A DNA stretch of 64,000 nt, from assembly GCA_013265495.1 (NCBI GenBank), contig MU061814.1:5831684-5895683 (forward strand), given 5' to 3'. Below are positions 1-61,519 of the stretch, piece after piece. How positions within the stretch are numbered: the stretch's first letter is position 1; every line of letters starts with the position of its first letter. The position numbers and the translations under genes were made by a program. Below the pieces are notes generated by a model. That model did not search any database, had not been told where the DNA came from, and was given only the letters and a program-made list of their open reading frames with translations. This DNA is from Vicugna vicugna. Lineage: Eukaryota.

Positions 1-1373
1 CTCCCCTGCCTGCCACGCTTCCCAAGGCGAAATTCCAAATACAGGAGGCCAGCCATCCACAGGGACAGGCGAACGGGAGGCCCCAGCGGAGATCGGCCAC
101 ACCCCAGTCTGCACAGCTGGGGCCCAGCGCAGCAGGGTTGGGGTGGGGGGGAGCTGCATCCACAGAGACCTGCCCAGCCAACGGCCAGACCGCGGATGCC
201 CAGGGGAGGTAGGGGGTGGAGTGACGCTCGTGAGACTCGCGCACCGCAGAGCTGAGCGTGGCCCGGGCTCCTGGCCCAGCCGTGGACACCTCCGGCCCTT
301 CTGATTCCCAGCAGCCTGATCACAACCCCTGACCTGAAGGAACAGCCTGTGGCCAGAAGCACCCTGGACACAAGCTCCAGGCAAGCAGTACAGCTTCTGC
401 TGGGACCCCAAATCTCCTCTTGTGGGGCTGCAACAGCCTCCCCTGCAGCACCCACGTGGGGGACACACAGGCAGCACGGGCAGGTGGGGGCCACCCTTCG
501 AGCCCCTCTCCAGGCGGGGGGCTCGGAGCATGCATGGATGCAGATGGACAAGCATGCCGCCGCCCTGGGGGCCCTGACCCTGCTGTGGAGCCCCTCCTGC
601 TGCCCGCTGCTGGGCACCACGGCTCCCAGCTCCAGCGCGGACCACATGCACATGAGGACAGGTGAGCACAGCTGCCGGCACCTGCAGGGCCGCCCTGGTC
701 GGGGAGGGGGCGGGCAGGAGGGGCACCCAGAGCAAGCAGGAGGACAGACGCCCCACACGCCCGACAGCAGACAGTGGACAGAGAGGGAACGTGCCAGCAG
801 TCAGGGAGCCCACGGGGCGAAGGTCGGGCAGACTTTCACCGCCCCGTTTCCAGTCTGCCCTGAGCCAGGCCTGTACGGGGGAGGGGGAGCTGTGGACCTC
901 CGGCTTTCCGGTGTGTCTGGTGTGTCAGGACCGAGGGGCCCGGCACCCACAGGACGGAGCCGCCTCCCGCGGGCGGGCGGGTTAAGGGCAGCGGCCCTCT
1001 GCTGCGTAGTAGAGGTGCTAGATGGGCCAGCTGCAGGGGAGCGACTCGCCAGAGAGCAGTCAGAGCCTGGACGCTCCGGTGCTCTGTCGGGGTTTCAGAG
1101 CCCCCGGCCAGCCCCCCTCCTGCTGGGAGCAGAGCATCGTTTGGCTTGCAGATGAGGAAGGGCATTGGCTCCGTGACTACGTCACCAGGAGGGTTTGGAG
1201 TCAGAGGGAGCCTAGCGCTCCAGAAGCGGCTGCCAATCAGAATCGGGCCTAGGGGGCCGGGCCGGCGCCACCTCTCCCTGGTCCATCTAGAACCTCTAAT
1301 AAGCAGAGTGTCCGGAGCAGGAGGGGACAAGAGCCGTGCAGCAATGGTTGTCCGAGCGGCGTGTCCGAGGTAC

Positions 1374-1427
1374 CTAGCGTGTCCAGGGCAGCATCCACAC
1401 AGGGACTCTCTGCACCGTCTGCCTTTA
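1374..1427 (-). CDS. KCNQ2: KCNQ2 exon 12 (54 nt, alternative cassette)
   Basis: ttccag|T AAA GGC AGA CGG TGC AGA GAG TCC CTG TGT GGA TGC TGC CCT GGA CAC GCT AG|gtacct encodes (S)KGRRCRESLCGCCPGHA(S), homologous to human KGSPCRGPLCGCCPGRSS. Branch-point-like GACTAAC at 1448-1454. Confidence 0.93.
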
Positions 1428-4200
1428 CTGGAAATGAGGAGAGGACAGTTAGTCCCGGGGGCGCCGGCATCCAGGACGTGACCAGAGGGGCCTGCCCGGC
1501 GCGCGGGCAGAGGGCACAGAACCGAGCCACCGACCGACCCAGGGCAGCTCTGGGCTCCGGCCCCACTGGCTCCAGAGTTCGCGTCTGAGTGAGAGCAGCC
1601 GGGAGGCCGTGAAGAAAGTCTTCCCGCTGGCCTGGAAAAGAATAGCCCCTATTTTTGGAGGAAAAAAATTCCCTGTTTTTTCCTCCAAAAATACCTTTTC
1701 CTTCCAGCATGTAACCAGTTTTGGGACCACGTCTTTTAAAAGATGTATTATTTTTTGCTCTATTCATGCCAACAAAAAAATAATACATGGGCTAAGGCTT
1801 TGCCAGTTCTGGGAAGACAGGACTCCAGAAAGCTCACGTTTTCAGAGGAAAAACGTGCCAGTTTGGCTTCACAAACCAACCCAGCCAGCGGCCCGATCAG
1901 AGCGGCCCCGGCTTACCAGGAGACAGCAGCTGCCTCTACCTGGAGGGAGCCAAGGAGGAGGGGGCTCGGGGCACCTGGACTTGGAGGGACCGCCAAGGTC
2001 GGATCTTGGGTGAAGTCCACCCCATGCTGAGGCCCCGGCAGGGCGGAGACGGAAGGCCCACGGCCAGCCCTGCCCAAGAACCTCCCCAAAGGCCCGAGAC
2101 TCATCTCTGCACTAGAACCTGCAAACTTCTAAGCAAAAATGAAAAGAACCAGAACAAGCAAGAACTTTAAGAAACCCTTCACTTCCCCGGGGCCTCTCTC
2201 TGCCTCCACCTTCGGTGCTGTTGCTTCTGTGACAGTAGTTCTCAAACTGTGCACCTGAGCAACCCAGATGCGCCCGTGTCCTCACGTTCATTTAAACTCC
2301 AGTGGCACCTGCCAGTGTCCAGACAAGGATCTCCCCACTACGCATGAAGGACACCCTTTCTCAACACCAGCAAGCCTGCAGGTCAAGGTTCCGCAAGGAG
2401 CTTTCGCTTGGCTGCCCACGGCTCAGGGTCACTGGACCCCCCCCCCGGCCTCATCCCCCACAGAGGACCCCGCCAGCACGGCTTCCTCCCGATGGGACCT
2501 TCCCTAGTCACTTCGGGGTGTTGAACAAGATGAACTAGAGGTGGATCCCAGGCAGGACGGAGCCGTCAGGTGAGAGTACTCATGCAGGGGTCCCTAGGAC
2601 CCGGAACCTCACCCAGTGGCCCCTGAATCTGGGGCAAATGTGGTCTCCCAGGGTGCATTCTGGAGGCAGCCACAATTCCACCAGGGCCTGCTGGACAGCA
2701 AAGGACCTAAAGACCCGGACCCCACCCCCCCGCCAGCTCCTCCCGGGGTCCCCAGGCCTGCACACAGGGCCCTGCCCACCCTGCCTGGAGGCTCCTCCCC
2801 TGGGAAGAGGATGTGGCGGGGATGGTCTCTGCCTCCAGCTCCCTGGGATGGCCCCAGCTTTGACCACTCCTCCAACCTTCAAACTTCCTGCTGCCTTTGA
2901 AGCTCCCAGCAGTTGCCCCAGAAGCATCTCCCAGGCCCCGTGGCCCAACACCACCAAACGCACCATTCCGTGGGTGCAGGCAACGGCCCCGTGCCTGGCT
3001 CCCAAGCCCAGGAGACCGAAGACCGGTTCTCTAACTGCATGGAATCTTTAATTTTAGTGAAAACTTAAACAGCCTCTCGTGGCCAGTGGCTCCTGTGTGG
3101 GGCAGTGCCGTCTGAGAGCATGACAGAGCGGGGGACGGCAGGCTGCTGGCAGACGGCCCTCCCCGGGCACTGCCCCGTGGCTTTGGGGGTGGGAGGATGC
3201 CTGGCTAAAGCCCGTCTCCTCCAGGCCCCAGCCTGGCACCAGGGTTTCCTGCCCAGGTCGGCCCCATGGAACCTCACCCCATCCAGACTGCCGGCAGGCA
3301 AGCCCAGGGGACCTGGGGCCCAAGAGGGTGGGAGAGGTGCCCACAGACACTCACCAAGACCAGACTGGACAGACACGCAGGCAAGCAAGGCACACTGCCG
3401 CCTGCGACGAGGAGGGGGCCACACGGACCAGGGCAAAGCGGCTGGGGTGCAGGGGTTCCCCCAGGCACAGAGGGGCATTCAGAAACAGAGTGGGACACAG
3501 GGAGAGGTCAGAGACACACCCGGAGCAGCATAGCCCGAGACCCCCGCCCGCCTCGACCCCCAGCCCCACACCTCGATGTGGACACCCACACAGGCAAGGG
3601 AAGCGCTTCCACCTTGAGCCAGGGCCGGGGGTCTCACAGCAGCTGAGGGAGGGTTCCTGGATCCACCCTGCCCACCTGCACTTTGTGGAACAAGGTCCCC
3701 TCGCCAGGCAGCTCAGGGACAGCCCACCCCACCCTGGGCCCAGCGGCAGGACATTTTCCCGCACACCTGCTGTGCCCTGGGTGCTAAACGTGGCTCTGGA
3801 CGCCCCAGTCAGGGGAAAGAAATGCCGCCTCTGTCACCTGGTGGACAGGTGTGCATCCAGGAGAGGCAGGCCCTCTGCTCCCAGGGCCTCAGCCCAGGGT
3901 CCCCGGGAGGCGGGCTGGTCCAGGCAGGCCCGGGAAGCCGCTGGGTCACAGGCAGGCAGGGACACAGGACACACGGGGAGGAACAGAGGGGCGGTGTGCG
4001 GGAAGCAGGGAGGAGCCACAGAACGTACCGGAGAGCCGGGGGCTCCCTGTGTCCTCACCTCGAGTCCTGCTTTCAGGGCCAGCCACCTCATCCCCAAAGA
4101 CAGAGCGGACGTGATAGGGGCCCGAGAAGGGCAGTGACATGATTAAAGGCACTTGGGGGGACAGCAAGATTTTCCAGATTGGGGGAGGGGAGGGCAGGAG

Positions 4201-4218
4201 AGGAGAGAGAGAGAGAGA
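4201..4218. repeat. (GA)n / transcript (UC)n microsatellite in KCNQ2 intron 11
   Basis: aggagagagagagagaga. Confidence 0.85.
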
Positions 4219-5539
4219 CAGGCTGAGACGACAGTTGTTGGCTGGGGAGTAAAGCAGGGCTCGAGAAGCCGCGTCCGGCCAGAGGGGCCTTGGTCCACCG
4301 GGCGGGCGGGCTGAGGCCGGAGCAGCGCCCACCAGGGCAGAGCCAAGGGCAGACCCACCTGCTTCCTCAGGCAGGAAGGGCCGAAGGCAGCGCCAACGGG
4401 GACTGACAGAACGGGACACCCTTGGGGCGCGCCGCACACCAGGCCCTGCCGCACACGTCTCCCACCCGGCCCTGACCACAGCCCCGCGTCGGGACCCCCT
4501 CGCTCCCATCCTGCGGATGAGAACGGAGCTCGCTGCCCGGGCTGAACCCTCTGGTCCCGGGTCTGAGGGGTCACCACTTCTGCTCTTTGGGCTGGTTGGG
4601 GGCAAAAGCATTGCTGACCTCCCCAGTCCCAGTCCCAGCTGCCACCCCACTTTTGGGGACGTGAGGGATGGAGGCGCAGGCCCCCTTCTGATGGAGGCTG
4701 AGGGTGGGGCTCAGCCTGACTCCTCCCCAGCCGAGTGGCCGGCCAAGCTGCCTTCGGTCCAGGTGAGCAGGCACCTCTGGACCACGGCCTGGGGAGCTGG
4801 AATCACTCTGCATGGGGGAGCGGGCACCGGGGACCCCTGAGCTCAGAGATACACAGTGACCCACACGCAGGCTGAGGTTCATCAAACTCAGAAGTTGGAA
4901 ACTGACCTGGATTTTCTATTAAACACTAGGAAACTAGCAGGCTGCCAGCACGCCTTCGCTGCCCCCAGCAGAGGCGGCCCGTGGGGGTCCCTACACCCAC
5001 CAGTCTCTAACTCCCAGAAGTAACAGAGCTGCAGGGGCCTGAACAGACACGGGGAGGGGGAGCTCCAGCCCCACCGAGGGGCTGTGAGGGGGTGGGAGAC
5101 TCTGCCCAAAAGGGGACCCTCTCCCACTCGTCCAGGAAACTTCAGCAAACGGGACTTGCCAGTGGGTGGAGCGAAGACGCCTCGGTAGAGTGGCCCCACC
5201 TTCCACCCTCTGCCCCGACCCGCAGTGTCGGAGGGAGACCTGTCCACTCAGAACGGCCCTGTGCCTGGACTGGCAGGCGTGCTCTCCCAGAAGCCCCTGC
5301 CTTCGAGGGGCTGCATCCTGGGTGGGAGGCGGGAGGGAGCTGCCCCTAGGCTATGAGCCAGCCCCGGGCCCTGGGAGGGGACATGCACACAGCAGGTGAT
5401 TTAAGGGCCCACATCACCGGCGGGCAGGGGTCTGCACACAGTTCCACACGGGAGCACGCCCAGGCCCCACGACAGCCCTCGGCTACCGGGTGACACGCAG
5501 AGCAGGCACGGAGGGAGCAGGAGGCAGACGGGCACTGAC

Positions 5540-5569
5540 CTTGGCGAGGGCTCCGGCTGAGGCTCCTTC
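5540..5569 (-). CDS. KCNQ2: KCNQ2 exon 11 (30-nt microexon)
   Basis: tttgaag|G AAG GAG CCT CAG CCG GAG CCC TCG CCA AG|gtcagt encodes (R)KEPQPEPSP(S); human is KDPPPEPSPS. Confidence 0.93.
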
Positions 5570-36723: not shown

Positions 36724-37055
36724 NNNNNNNNNNNNNNNNNNNNNNNNNNNNNNNNNNNNNNNNNNNNNNNNNNNNNNNNNNNNNNNNNNNNNNNNNNNNN
36801 NNNNNNNNNNNNNNNNNNNNNNNNNNNNNNNNNNNNNNNNNNNNNNNNNNNNNNNNNNNNNNNNNNNNNNNNNNNNNNNNNNNNNNNNNNNNNNNNNNNN
36901 NNNNNNNNNNNNNNNNNNNNNNNNNNNNNNNNNNNNNNNNNNNNNNNNNNNNNNNNNNNNNNNNNNNNNNNNNNNNNNNNNNNNNNNNNNNNNNNNNNNN
37001 NNNNNNNNNNNNNNNNNNNNNNNNNNNNNNNNNNNNNNNNNNNNNNNNNNNNNNN
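36724..37055 (-). other. KCNQ2: 332-bp assembly gap inferred to contain KCNQ2 coding exon 1 (ATG and about 296 coding nt)
   Basis: N run. The right flank matches my recollection of the human KCNQ2 5'UTR up to about 25 nt before the start codon. Gap length fits that UTR remainder plus a 296-nt coding part and a few intron bases. Exon sequence itself is not visible. Confidence 0.8.
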
Positions 37056-60000: not shown

Positions 60001-61519
60001 CTCTTGGCTGGACTGCGGGGGTTTCACGAGCCTGGGGAAAGAAGATCCAGCTAAAATTAACCGTTATCAAGCTGTCAGCCCTGGAAATAAACCCGCCTTC
60101 CATTGGCTACGAGTGATGTCACCGCGGACCAGGTTAATAATAACCTGCCAATGCAGAGCTTTCTACCTGTGCCGCCTTCCTGGGGGCCGTGGCCAGCAGG
60201 TGGGGCTTGGGGGCGGGGTGTCTCAGAATGACCTCACCTCTGGCCTTGGGCCGCGGGCTGCCCTCTGACCCCTAAGCATCAGGTGCACATCCTCACATGT
60301 GGGTCAGTCTCCCAGCCTGCCTGGGCAGCAGGACCTCAGATGGCCTCAGAGGCACGTTCCCTGACCCCAGCTCTCCAGCCCAGGGGTCTGAGCTGCCCTT
60401 GAGGCAGAAAATTAAGTGGTCTCCATGGCAAAGAAGAGCTCTTGGCTATAGAGCTGCCCTCAGAAAAGCGAGGTCACGACCCCTAATCAGAGAAGGGGGG
60501 CTGGGCTGGGTGGGGCGGGGCCATGTGCACACTAGCTGGACCCAAGGCCAGTCAAGGCTGCACAGCCTGCCGGCGCTGTGCTCAGTCCCTGGGCCAAATG
60601 AAATGGGGAGCTGGGGTGACTTACTGGACAATCCAGGCTCCCAAACACTCCACCCTCCCAGACACAGTGTCTGGGAGGGTATGAGGCCGACCTGAGTCAC
60701 CTAGGGAAGGAAGCCTGGAGAGGGGCTCACAGCTCCTCAGAGAGGGGGAGGGGCTGCCTGGCCTGCCCCACCCCCAGCCGCGCTGGGGCCACCTGTACCT
60801 GCAGTGCTGAAGGAGTAGGTGGCCCCTGCGGGCTCCTCCCCAGGCCCTCACCCCACAGGAGCCCTCAGACGTCTGAGTGCAGCCCTGCTCACAACCACAG
60901 GCCGCCACCGGCTTCTAGGGAGCAGAGAGGGGGTCTGGTGGGCCGGCGCCCAGGGCCAGGGGCTCCAGCCTGGAGCTAAGAGGAAGGAGCGGCCAGGCTC
61001 CCCATTTGGTCCATTGCAGGCTGGGAGGCCAACCAGAGATGGGGGTGGGGGGCGCTGCGGCTGGATCCAGATGCCCTGGCACTGGCACCGCCCTGGAGCC
61101 CTGGAGTGGGGGAGGCGAGGCCTCAGCACTCAGCCAGCCTCCCCACCCCCAAGTTCAAGGGGTGCATCTCCAGGCAGGAGTTGCCCAGGGGAACGTGAAG
61201 CTCGTTAGCATCTCCCAGCCCGTGTTTTCTCCTCTCTGAACGGAGCTCCCCTCAACTGGGCATTTGGGAATAACCCGGCCTGGGGAGCCCCACAGACGCT
61301 GGGGCCTCTTGGGATGGGCTGATGCCAGAGATGGCGGGCGGGGCAAAGGATGGGAGGGAGACTGAGGGGGACAGTGCCCCAGCTTGTCCCTGAACAGACC
61401 TAGAGACCTACAAATGTGCCCCGCCCCCAAGTCGGGAAACAGCCCCGCCCTCCCGCCCTTGAGAGCACCGCTACCTTGGCTCCTGCCGCGCAGACAGCGC
61501 CGCCTGCTTGAGCGCTGCG

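What the first reader, a model, noticed from the sequence alone, without database searches (positions are those of the whole stretch)
1626..1860. Cluster of perfect AT-rich hairpins just upstream of KCNQ2 alternative exon 12
Seen: in very GC-rich DNA, a 235-bp island holds several inverted repeats. (a) A perfect 18-bp stem, TATTTTTGGAGGAAAAAA 1650-1667 with TTTTTTCCTCCAAAAATA 1676-1693, 8-nt loop, extendable by GGAAAAG 1634-1640/CTTTTCC 1695-1701 and GCTGG 1626-1630/CCAGC 1704-1708. (b) A perfect 14-bp stem, 1743-1756 with 1775-1788, whose loop reads GGCAUG on the transcript. (c) An 18-nt near-palindrome at 1729-1746 overlapping the arm of (b), so the two folds are mutually exclusive. (d) A 6-bp stem (1807-1812/1825-1830) and an 8-bp stem (1835-1842/1850-1857). 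Established: RBFOX binds (U)GCAUG, including in hairpin loops; intronic dsRNA can modulate splicing or attract ADAR/Drosha. Inference: a structured RNA element (possibly a switch) controlling exon 12 or the candidate exon at 1917-2128. An exapted palindromic DNA transposon is the main alternative.
Basis: partly seen in the sequence, partly recalled or inferred. Interest (0 to 1): 0.8.

Follow-up and report, generated by a model that had tools for sequence, protein, structure and literature searches.

The report
Conserved twin hairpins in KCNQ2 intron
Two hairpin-forming stretches in an intron of the epilepsy-linked potassium-channel gene KCNQ2, just upstream of an optional exon, have been kept as well as the exons themselves across carnivores, bats, primates and rodents, so they are probably a regulatory element (most likely for splicing), though its function is untested.

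Summary
The 18-bp and 14-bp perfect stems are the two longest perfect hairpins in the 64 kb, and they lie 50 nt apart. The window is KCNQ2 on the minus strand. The island lies 206-430 nt upstream of the 54-nt alternative exon 12 (1374-1427).

I fetched orthologous introns from bear, a bat, a galago and two sciurid rodents, and all keep both hairpins. Identity to the window is 91-93% for hairpin (b) and 78-88% for hairpin (a). That equals exon 12 (85-96%). The linker (54-68%) and the spacer to the 3' splice site (39-50%) are at background. A recent MITE and chance are therefore excluded.

The loop GCAUG of (b) is invariant, one of only two fully kept GCAUGs in 5.6 kb. The loop of (a) varies from 5 to about 45 nt while its arms persist.

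Covariation is weak: 1-2 compensatory changes, not above shuffles. RNA structure is therefore favoured but not proven against a DNA-level enhancer. Elements (c) and (d), and the proposed "switch", are not conserved. Read-level RNA evidence could not be obtained.

Verdict: a probable new member of a known kind, a conserved intronic splicing-regulatory hairpin module. Moderately interesting and directly testable.

The parts
1650..1693 (-). Hairpin (a), inner stem: 18 bp perfect with an 8-nt loop. A purine arm (UAUUUUUGGAGGAAAAAA) pairs with a U/C-rich arm.
   Evidence: The arms are kept in all 5 orthologues while the loop varies from 5 to about 45 nt. Galago shows one A-U to G-C double change.
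1634..1701 (-). Hairpin (a) with its outer helix (GGAAAAGG/UCUUUUCC) across an asymmetric internal loop. The conserved UAGGGG and a 3'ss-like UUCUUUUCCAG|G lie on its 3' side.
   Evidence: RNAalifold on A2 and model R1. 78-88% identity to the orthologues. Each orthologue folds the same way, z -1.7 to -4.6.
1743..1788 (-). Hairpin (b): 14-bp perfect A/U-rich stem with an 18-nt apical loop.
   Evidence: 91-93% identity in all orthologues. The only stem changes are A-U to G-U at the base and bat changes at the base.
1765..1769 (-). GCAUG (as GGCAUGA) in the loop of hairpin (b). It lies about 340 nt upstream of exon 12 and about 147 nt downstream of the GGTAAG donor at 1916.
   Evidence: Kept in 5/5 orthologues. 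Of the 7 GCAUGs in 5.6 kb of sense strand, only this one and 529-533 are fully kept.
1702..1742 (-). Linker between the hairpins. It includes near-palindrome (c) 1729-1746 and is not conserved.
   Evidence: 54-68% identity. The palindrome is broken by an indel in galago and sciurids.
1800..1860 (-). Stems (d): present in the window but lineage-specific.
   Evidence: 48-64% identity. Neither (d) stem appears in the consensus fold; RNAalifold instead pairs 1807-1812 with the downstream UCUGGA, and the bat carries a 20-nt insertion here.
1374..1427 (-). Alternative exon 12 of KCNQ2 (54 nt, 18 codons).
   Evidence: Absent from the bear product P0180 and present in many isoforms. Human numbering from PMC7657400. 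It is a regulated cassette in mouse; the PMC13310073 primers span its junctions.
1428..1460 (-). Branch point (ACUAAC), polypyrimidine tract and acceptor of exon 12.
   Evidence: 85-94% identity. Near-invariant block in A1.
520..565 (-). Conserved GCAUG cluster about 810-845 nt downstream of exon 12 (UGCAUG 529-533, GGCAUG 553-557).
   Evidence: Kept in 5/5 and 4/5 species. 65-91% identity. In bear it lies about 2.5 kb upstream of exon 13.
5540..5569 (-). Exon 11 (30 nt), the upstream boundary of the intron that holds the island.

Best explanation
The core of the island (about 1634-1795, minus strand) is a single-copy intronic element of KCNQ2 that is at least as old as Boreoeutheria. It consists of two separately conserved hairpins. 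I think it most likely works in the pre-mRNA as a splicing-regulatory module for the neighbouring alternative exon.

Shown: the hairpins are real, they are not due to chance, and they are under purifying selection as strong as on the flanking exons. The selection is confined to the two hairpins. The apical loop of hairpin (b) carries an invariant GCAUG. The arms of hairpin (a) persist while its loop is free to change.

Inferred: hairpin (b) presents the GCAUG single-stranded to RBFOX proteins. By the usual position rule, a site about 340 nt upstream would repress exon 12. A site about 147 nt downstream of the conserved GGTAAG donor at 1916 would promote the candidate exon ending at 1917. Hairpin (a) locks a U/C-rich tract (a PTBP/hnRNP C/ELAVL-type target) against a purine-rich tract. 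It thereby sets the access to, or spacing of, the conserved flanking motifs UAGGGG and UUCUUUUCCAG. The conserved UGCAUG cluster downstream of exon 12 would then be the opposing enhancer arm.
For: Both stems are the longest perfect hairpins in 64 kb. Both are present in bear, bat, galago and two sciurids. Identity is 91-93% for (b) and 78-88% for (a), against 85-96% for exon 12, 54-68% for the linker and 39-50% for the spacer (profile). Every orthologue folds into the same two hairpins. The core z-score is -2.8 to -4.6 in all six species. RNAalifold recovers both hairpins. Loop length in (a) ranges from 5 to about 45 nt with the arms kept, and the bat stem is re-registered with a bulge rather than lost. 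There are compensatory A-U to G-C (galago) and G-C to A-U (bat) changes and several G-U substitutions. Across the helices, 275/286 cells pair in the sense orientation against 260/286 in antisense. The loop GCAUG is kept in 5/5 species, and only one other of the 7 GCAUGs in 5.6 kb is equally kept. Exon 12 is a genuine regulated cassette. Kcnq2 is a reported RBFOX and PTBP2 splicing target.
Against: Covariation is statistically weak. On the model-fitted alignment, 95.0% of cells pair against 94.5% in shuffles, and 79/500 shuffles are at least as high. Only one pair changes on both sides in that register. The stems are conserved mainly as sequence, which a DNA-level or protein-binding constraint would also give. 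The motif is GGCAUG, not UGCAUG, and it is about 340 nt from exon 12, outside the usual 300-nt window. The only Rbfox1-linked Kcnq2 RT-PCR assay whose exon I could pin down (PMC3526159; no change found there) targets the 30-nt exon, not exon 12. There is no Rfam family match. Only six sequences were compared, two of them close relatives, and none from outside Boreoeutheria.
Confidence: 0.45

Rival explanations
1. It is a DNA-level intronic enhancer or silencer. The conserved arms would be transcription-factor sites, not RNA stems. Candidates are inverted GGAGGAAAAA / GGAAAAG motifs of NFAT/ETS type and CCAAAAATAG-like A/T-rich boxes of MEF2/SRF type. Dyad symmetry would reflect paired sites.
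For: The arms are conserved as sequence with almost no covariation. The loop of (b) and the flanks of (a) are conserved too. The spacer between the arms of (a) is free, as between independent sites. From my own knowledge, unchecked here: GGAGGAAAAAC is the classic IL-2 distal NFAT core, and NFAT-dependent, activity-driven KCNQ2 transcription has been reported (Zhang and Shapiro 2012).
Against: The two double changes that restore pairing (galago, bat) and the bat's re-registered stem are not expected for independent sites. G-U-compatible changes outnumber A-C ones in the sense orientation. Fourteen- to eighteen-bp perfect arms are far longer than a binding site. The location next to a regulated cassette exon and the invariant loop GCAUG fit the RNA reading. 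No motif scan or chromatin data were available.
Confidence: 0.25
2. It is a precursor of a small RNA, or a dsRNA substrate. With its outer helix, hairpin (a) has a 5' arm of about 31-35 nt. It could be a non-canonical pri-miRNA, an ADAR target or a stable intronic RNA.
For: The pattern of conserved arms and a variable loop resembles that of miRNA genes. RNA-run contigs hold 27-47% of the sampled words of 1600-1900 but only about 14-18% of the flanks.
Against: No miRNA family in Rfam reaches even a third of its gathering score. The arms are low-complexity A/U-rich. There is a large asymmetric internal loop. The apical loop is 8 nt in the window and about 45 nt in the bat. Sciurid hairpins are only marginally stable (z -1.7 and -2.1). 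No small-RNA or editing data could be read. The excess in RNA contigs may simply be GC bias.
Confidence: 0.07
3. It is a relic of a palindromic DNA transposon (MITE). If ancient and exapted, that is an origin compatible with any of the functions above. As a neutral or recent insertion, it would be a full alternative.
For: It is an AT-rich palindromic island inside GC-rich DNA. Dfam/RepeatMasker were not available, so an ancient family cannot be excluded.
Against: It sits at the orthologous site in Carnivora, Chiroptera, Primates, Rodentia and the window species. It is conserved like an exon. No second copy was found by BLAST, nhmmer or the covariance model in 317 kb of KCNQ2 loci. No terminal repeats or target-site duplication bracket the island. 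The neutral or recent version is therefore refuted.
Confidence: 0.15

Closest known systems
Conserved intronic RBFOX elements near neuronal cassette exons (GCAUG position-dependent RNA map; distal conserved sites of Lovci et al. 2013, from my own knowledge)
   Same: It has an invariant GCAUG in an intron flanking a regulated neuronal cassette exon. It pairs with a second conserved GCAUG cluster on the other side of the exon. Kcnq2 is a reported RBFOX target gene.
   Different: The motif is GGCAUG, not UGCAUG. It sits in the apical loop of a conserved 14-bp hairpin about 340 nt from the exon. RBFOX binding and RBFOX dependence of exon 12 are not shown. The one Rbfox1-linked Kcnq2 RT-PCR assay whose exon I could identify (PMC3526159) targets the 30-nt exon.
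Local RNA stem-loops that mask or present splicing signals (e.g. MAPT exon 10 stem, SMN2 TSL2, FGFR2 IAS2-ISAR; from my own knowledge)
   Same: It is a stable, evolutionarily kept intramolecular helix close to an alternative exon. One arm is a pyrimidine tract that would otherwise bind regulators.
   Different: Here the helices do not overlap a splice site of exon 12. They lie 206-415 nt upstream, and no mutational evidence exists.
GCAUG in terminal loops of pre-miRNAs bound by RBFOX (pre-miR-20b/107; from my own knowledge)
   Same: A GCAUG is displayed in a hairpin apical loop.
   Different: Hairpin (b) is too short for Drosha or Dicer processing, and no miRNA family matches.
MITE-derived palindromic hairpins (e.g. 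Made1/miR-548-type)
   Same: It is an AT-rich perfect inverted repeat in an intron.
   Different: It is single-copy in all sequence searched, sits at orthologous positions in four orders, and is under strong constraint.

Membership tests
RBFOX-regulated cassette exon with intronic (U)GCAUG | GCAUG in the intron flanking an alternative exon, conserved across species | tested here: met
   GCAUG at 1765-1769 is kept in 5/5 orthologues. Exon 12 is alternative.
RBFOX-regulated cassette exon with intronic (U)GCAUG | Full hexamer UGCAUG within about 300 nt of the regulated exon | tested here: not met
   The motif is GGCAUG (CGCAUG in the bat). It lies about 340 nt upstream of exon 12, although only about 147 nt downstream of the GGTAAG donor at 1916.
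RBFOX-regulated cassette exon with intronic (U)GCAUG | RBFOX binding (CLIP) and a splicing change on RBFOX loss | not testable with these tools
   The literature names Kcnq2 as a target, but the exon is not resolved.
Evolutionarily conserved RNA secondary structure | The same helices are predicted in all orthologues, with stability beyond shuffles | tested here: met
Evolutionarily conserved RNA secondary structure | Compensatory covariation significantly above a null | tested here: inconclusive
   There are 1-2 double changes. 79/500 shuffles reach the observed score. Sense pairing is 275/286 cells against 260/286 in antisense. Six sequences are too few.
pri-/pre-miRNA | Match to a known miRNA family | tested here: not met
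   The best miRNA hits score 22 bits against gathering scores of 60-144, and no hit reaches gathering threshold.
pri-/pre-miRNA | A stem of about 33-35 bp with few interruptions, and an apical loop of at least 10 nt | tested here: inconclusive
   The stem is 18 bp plus 8-12 bp across a 6-11-nt asymmetric internal loop. The loop is 8 nt in the window.
pri-/pre-miRNA | Small-RNA reads with defined ends | not testable with these tools
MITE / DNA transposon insertion | Multiple dispersed copies | tested here: not met
   Only the orthologous site is found in 317 kb.
MITE / DNA transposon insertion | Terminal inverted repeats plus a target-site duplication at the island borders | tested here: not met
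   None is among the repeats. The 12-nt direct repeat D10 flanks only hairpin (b) and is imperfect.
MITE / DNA transposon insertion | Lineage-restricted (recent) presence | tested here: not met
   It is present in Carnivora, Chiroptera, Primates and Rodentia.
Intronic transcriptional enhancer | Open chromatin, TF occupancy or reporter activity | not testable with these tools
   Only motif resemblance from memory.

The most novel reading that the evidence does not exclude
The twin hairpins form an autonomous structured RNA device. One possibility is a stable intron-derived RNA or non-canonical small-RNA precursor. Another is a conformational sensor in which the conserved CUGGA / UCCAGA / CCAGG segments pair alternatively. 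Such a device would couple neuronal activity to the choice between exon 12 and a frameshifting exon, tuning M-current channel output.
Probability: 0.08. Interest if true: 0.8.

Novelty: new member of a known kind. Interest (0 to 1): 0.5.

Why it matters
KCNQ2 is a major neonatal-epilepsy and developmental-encephalopathy gene, and its splice variants differ with neuronal maturation. This is a compact intronic element (about 165 nt) conserved like an exon. It lies next to a cassette exon that changes after nerve injury in mouse, in a gene reported as a target of RBFOX and PTBP2. It gives a concrete, mutable target for working out how that exon, or a nearby frameshifting exon, is controlled. It also marks a non-coding place where patient variants could matter and where antisense oligonucleotides could act. 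It is a clean test case for structure-presented RBFOX motifs.

Tried and rejected
1. Rfam at gathering and at E<=10: only noise.

2. Second copies: BLAST inside the window, and nhmmer and the covariance model R1 over the window plus five loci (317 kb). Only the orthologous site and its own palindromic reverse matches were found.

3. Deeper orthologues. Eight of 12 encoding-contig look-ups returned nothing, including four marsupial proteins and the coelacanth one. A fifth marsupial (Dromiciops) was found, but its gene is too long for DNA to be returned. The age beyond Boreoeutheria is therefore unknown.

4. Pattern scans of metagenome and prokaryote genome contigs for host contamination. The first scan found nothing. 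Five hits in later scans are chance matches in 23-30% GC microbial DNA.

There is therefore no junction, editing or coverage data.

6. A long-range 'RNA bridge' search with duplexfold between the island and intron 12 gave only unrealistic whole-length duplexes.

7. Literal sequence search of the paper library: no relevant hit.

8. The primary Rbfox papers (Gehman 2012, Jacko 2018, Lee 2009) are not held.

9. The template-switch origin I first considered for the perfect stems is moot, given their age.

Full report
**1. Observation**

The repeat finder returns the 18-nt arms 1650-1667/1676-1693 and the 14-nt arms 1743-1756/1775-1788, both 100% complementary. I checked the extensions, the near-palindrome (c) and the two short stems (d) letter by letter.

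GC falls to 0.375-0.395 here, against 0.64-0.72 around it. An exhaustive scan of the 64 kb for perfect stems of at least 12 bp with loops up to 40 nt finds only three hairpins. The two longest are (a) and (b), 50 nt apart. With a per-base match chance of about 0.26, I expect about 0.02 stems of at least 14 bp in the window, so this is not chance. Both strands of 1620-1865 fold better than all 200 dinucleotide shuffles (z -3.8 and -4.1).

**2. Context**

The window carries KCNQ2 on the minus strand. Exons 5-10 were located by conserved peptide motifs and open segments. Exon 1 is masked (N 36724-37055) and I left it so. Exon 11 (30 nt) is at about 5540-5569.

A 54-nt exon sits at 1374-1427. It has a CUAAC branch point, a pyrimidine tract, a CAG acceptor and a weak GUACCU donor. 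It encodes KGRRCRESLCGCCPGHA. Among the proteins fetched, that peptide is identical to Camelus isoforms, and predicted isoforms either contain or lack it. Human RefSeq transcripts b, c, d and f lack 'exon 12' (PMC7657400). In mouse trigeminal ganglion the same cassette is a validated regulated exon; the primers span the exon 11-12 and 11-13 junctions and begin TAAAGGCAGACC (PMC13310073).

The island is therefore in intron 11, with hairpin (a) 206-222 nt and the loop of (b) about 340 nt upstream of exon 12.

**3. Comparative evidence**

An exon-5 peptide search gave KCNQ2 proteins. From these I fetched genomic loci of Ursus americanus (L001), the bat Rhynchonycteris naso (L002), Otolemur garnettii (L003) and two sciurids (L004, L005). 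The intron is collinear in all of them.

In a six-species alignment of 5.6 kb, conservation peaks at five places: exon 11, a block at 3950-4230, the two hairpins, and exon 12 with its 3' splice site. Background is about 0.3-0.6. Identity to the window, by region:

- Hairpin (b): 91-93%
- Hairpin (a) with its outer helix: 78-88%
- Exon 12: 85-96%
- Linker between the hairpins: 54-68%
- Spacer to the 3' splice site: 39-50%
- Region of stems (d): 48-64%

Selection is thus focused on the two hairpins themselves. The near-palindrome (c) is broken by a 3-nt deletion in galago and sciurids. The proposed mutually exclusive fold is therefore not conserved. It is also thermodynamically one-sided.

**4. 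Structure**

Each orthologue, folded alone, forms both hairpins. The core has z -2.8 to -4.6 in all six species. RNAalifold recovers (a), its outer helix, (b), and a 6-bp helix (UCCAGA/UCUGGA) that closes (b).

The loop of (a) is 5-10 nt in bear, window and galago, 19-20 nt in the sciurids and about 45 nt in the bat, while the arms persist. The bat compensates a G-to-A change by re-registering with a one-nucleotide bulge. Galago has an A-U to G-C double change in the inner stem, and the bat a G-C to A-U change in the outer helix. Several changes give G-U. Over 48 pairs, 275/286 cells pair in the sense orientation against 260/286 in antisense.

The formal test is weak, however. On the model-fitted alignment, 95.0% of cells pair against 94.5% in shuffles. 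79/500 shuffles do as well, and one pair changes on both sides. The stems are conserved mostly as sequence. Six sequences cannot separate RNA pairing from another constraint.

**5. Motifs**

Of the seven GCAUGs on the sense strand of the 5.6 kb, only two are kept in all five orthologues. One is in the loop of (b) (1765-1769). The other is a UGCAUG at 529-533, which sits in a conserved cluster with GGCAUG 553-557, about 810-845 nt downstream of exon 12. In bear that cluster is about 2.5 kb from exon 13.

Kcnq2 is cited as an RBFOX target (PMC6906172, PMC3765197, PMC12652946). It is also cited as a PTBP2-repressed, adult-type exon gene (PMC3896118, PMC10679656). I could not establish which exon is meant. 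The one Rbfox1-linked RT-PCR assay I could read (PMC3526159, which found no change in that mouse model) concerns the 30-nt exon.

The island is also about 60-280 nt downstream of a GGTAAG donor at 1916, kept in 5/6 species. That donor belongs to the candidate exon of another note (s1-246788). The acceptor proposed there is kept in only 2/6 species, but a YAG about 20 nt further on is kept in 6/6. The regulated exon could therefore be that one.

**6. What it is not**

- No Rfam family matches.
- No other copy exists in 317 kb.
- No terminal repeats or target-site duplication bracket the island.
- It is not a recent insertion, because it is present in four orders.

An ancient exapted transposon cannot be excluded without Dfam.

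**7. Mechanism and rivals**

I commit, at about 0.45, to a pre-mRNA splicing-regulatory module. Hairpin (b) displays GCAUG to RBFOX. Hairpin (a) sequesters a U/C tract and positions the conserved flanking motifs. The steps marked 'inferred' in the explanation rest on established RBFOX and PTB biology, not on data from this locus.

The main rival, at about 0.25, is a DNA-level enhancer with inverted GGAA/NFAT-like and A/T-rich boxes. The near absence of covariation favours it. The two compensatory changes, the G-U bias and the arm lengths argue against it. A small-RNA or dsRNA-substrate role stands at about 0.07. Its only hint is that RNA-run contigs hold more of the island than of its flanks, which GC bias could also explain.

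**8. Limits**

- No sequence from outside Boreoeutheria could be obtained.
- The sciurids are near-duplicates of each other.

**Verdict**

This is a probable new member of a known kind: a conserved intronic regulatory hairpin module beside an alternative exon.

Noticed in passing
window 3950-4230 (minus-strand sense, intron 11): A second conservation peak inside intron 11, 73-88% identical to all five orthologues and as high as the exons. A predicted Myotis myotis isoform X7 (P0025) reads the orthologous stretch as coding. It is either an unannotated alternative or terminal exon, or another regulatory block.
   Followed up: partly
window 520-565 (minus strand): A conserved cluster of GCAUG motifs (UGCAUG 529-533 kept in 5/5 species, GGCAUG 553-557 kept in 4/5) about 810-845 nt downstream of exon 12.
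   Followed up: partly
window 1911-1917 and 2105-2131 (minus strand): This concerns the candidate exon of note s1-246788. Its GGTAAG donor is kept in 5/6 species. The proposed TAG acceptor at 2129-2131 is kept in only 2/6, but a YAG about 20 nt downstream is kept in 6/6. The exon length varies from 176 to 239 nt and is a multiple of 3 only in the bear (228 nt). No fetched predicted isoform contains it.
   Followed up: partly
window 1600-1900 versus 1300-2300: Assembled contigs of RNA runs X15-X17 hold 27-47% of the sampled words of the island but only about 14-18% of the flanks. The cause could be GC bias or a stable RNA species.
   Followed up: no
window 1632-1650 (minus strand): Directly 3' of hairpin (a) is a conserved sequence that looks like a strong 3' splice site (CUAUUUUCUUUUCCAG|G), preceded by a conserved UAGGGG. 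The DNA after it is not conserved, so it is more likely a decoy or protein-binding site than an exon start.
   Followed up: no
window 1428-1520 region; P0249: A predicted Vulpes vulpes isoform (P0249) extends exon 12 upstream by 30 codons. This implies an alternative acceptor inside the poorly conserved spacer between the island and exon 12.
   Followed up: no
window 60652-60680: The only other perfect hairpin of at least 12 bp in the window: a 13-bp GC-rich stem with a 3-nt loop.
   Followed up: no
P0058 (Latimeria chalumnae KCNQ2): The coelacanth protein already contains an exon-12-like segment (KGRSCRETLCGCC...). The cassette is therefore much older than the mammals in which the hairpins could be checked.
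   Followed up: no
window 36724-37055: Most of KCNQ2 exon 1 is a 332-base run of N (masked). I left it untouched.
   Followed up: no
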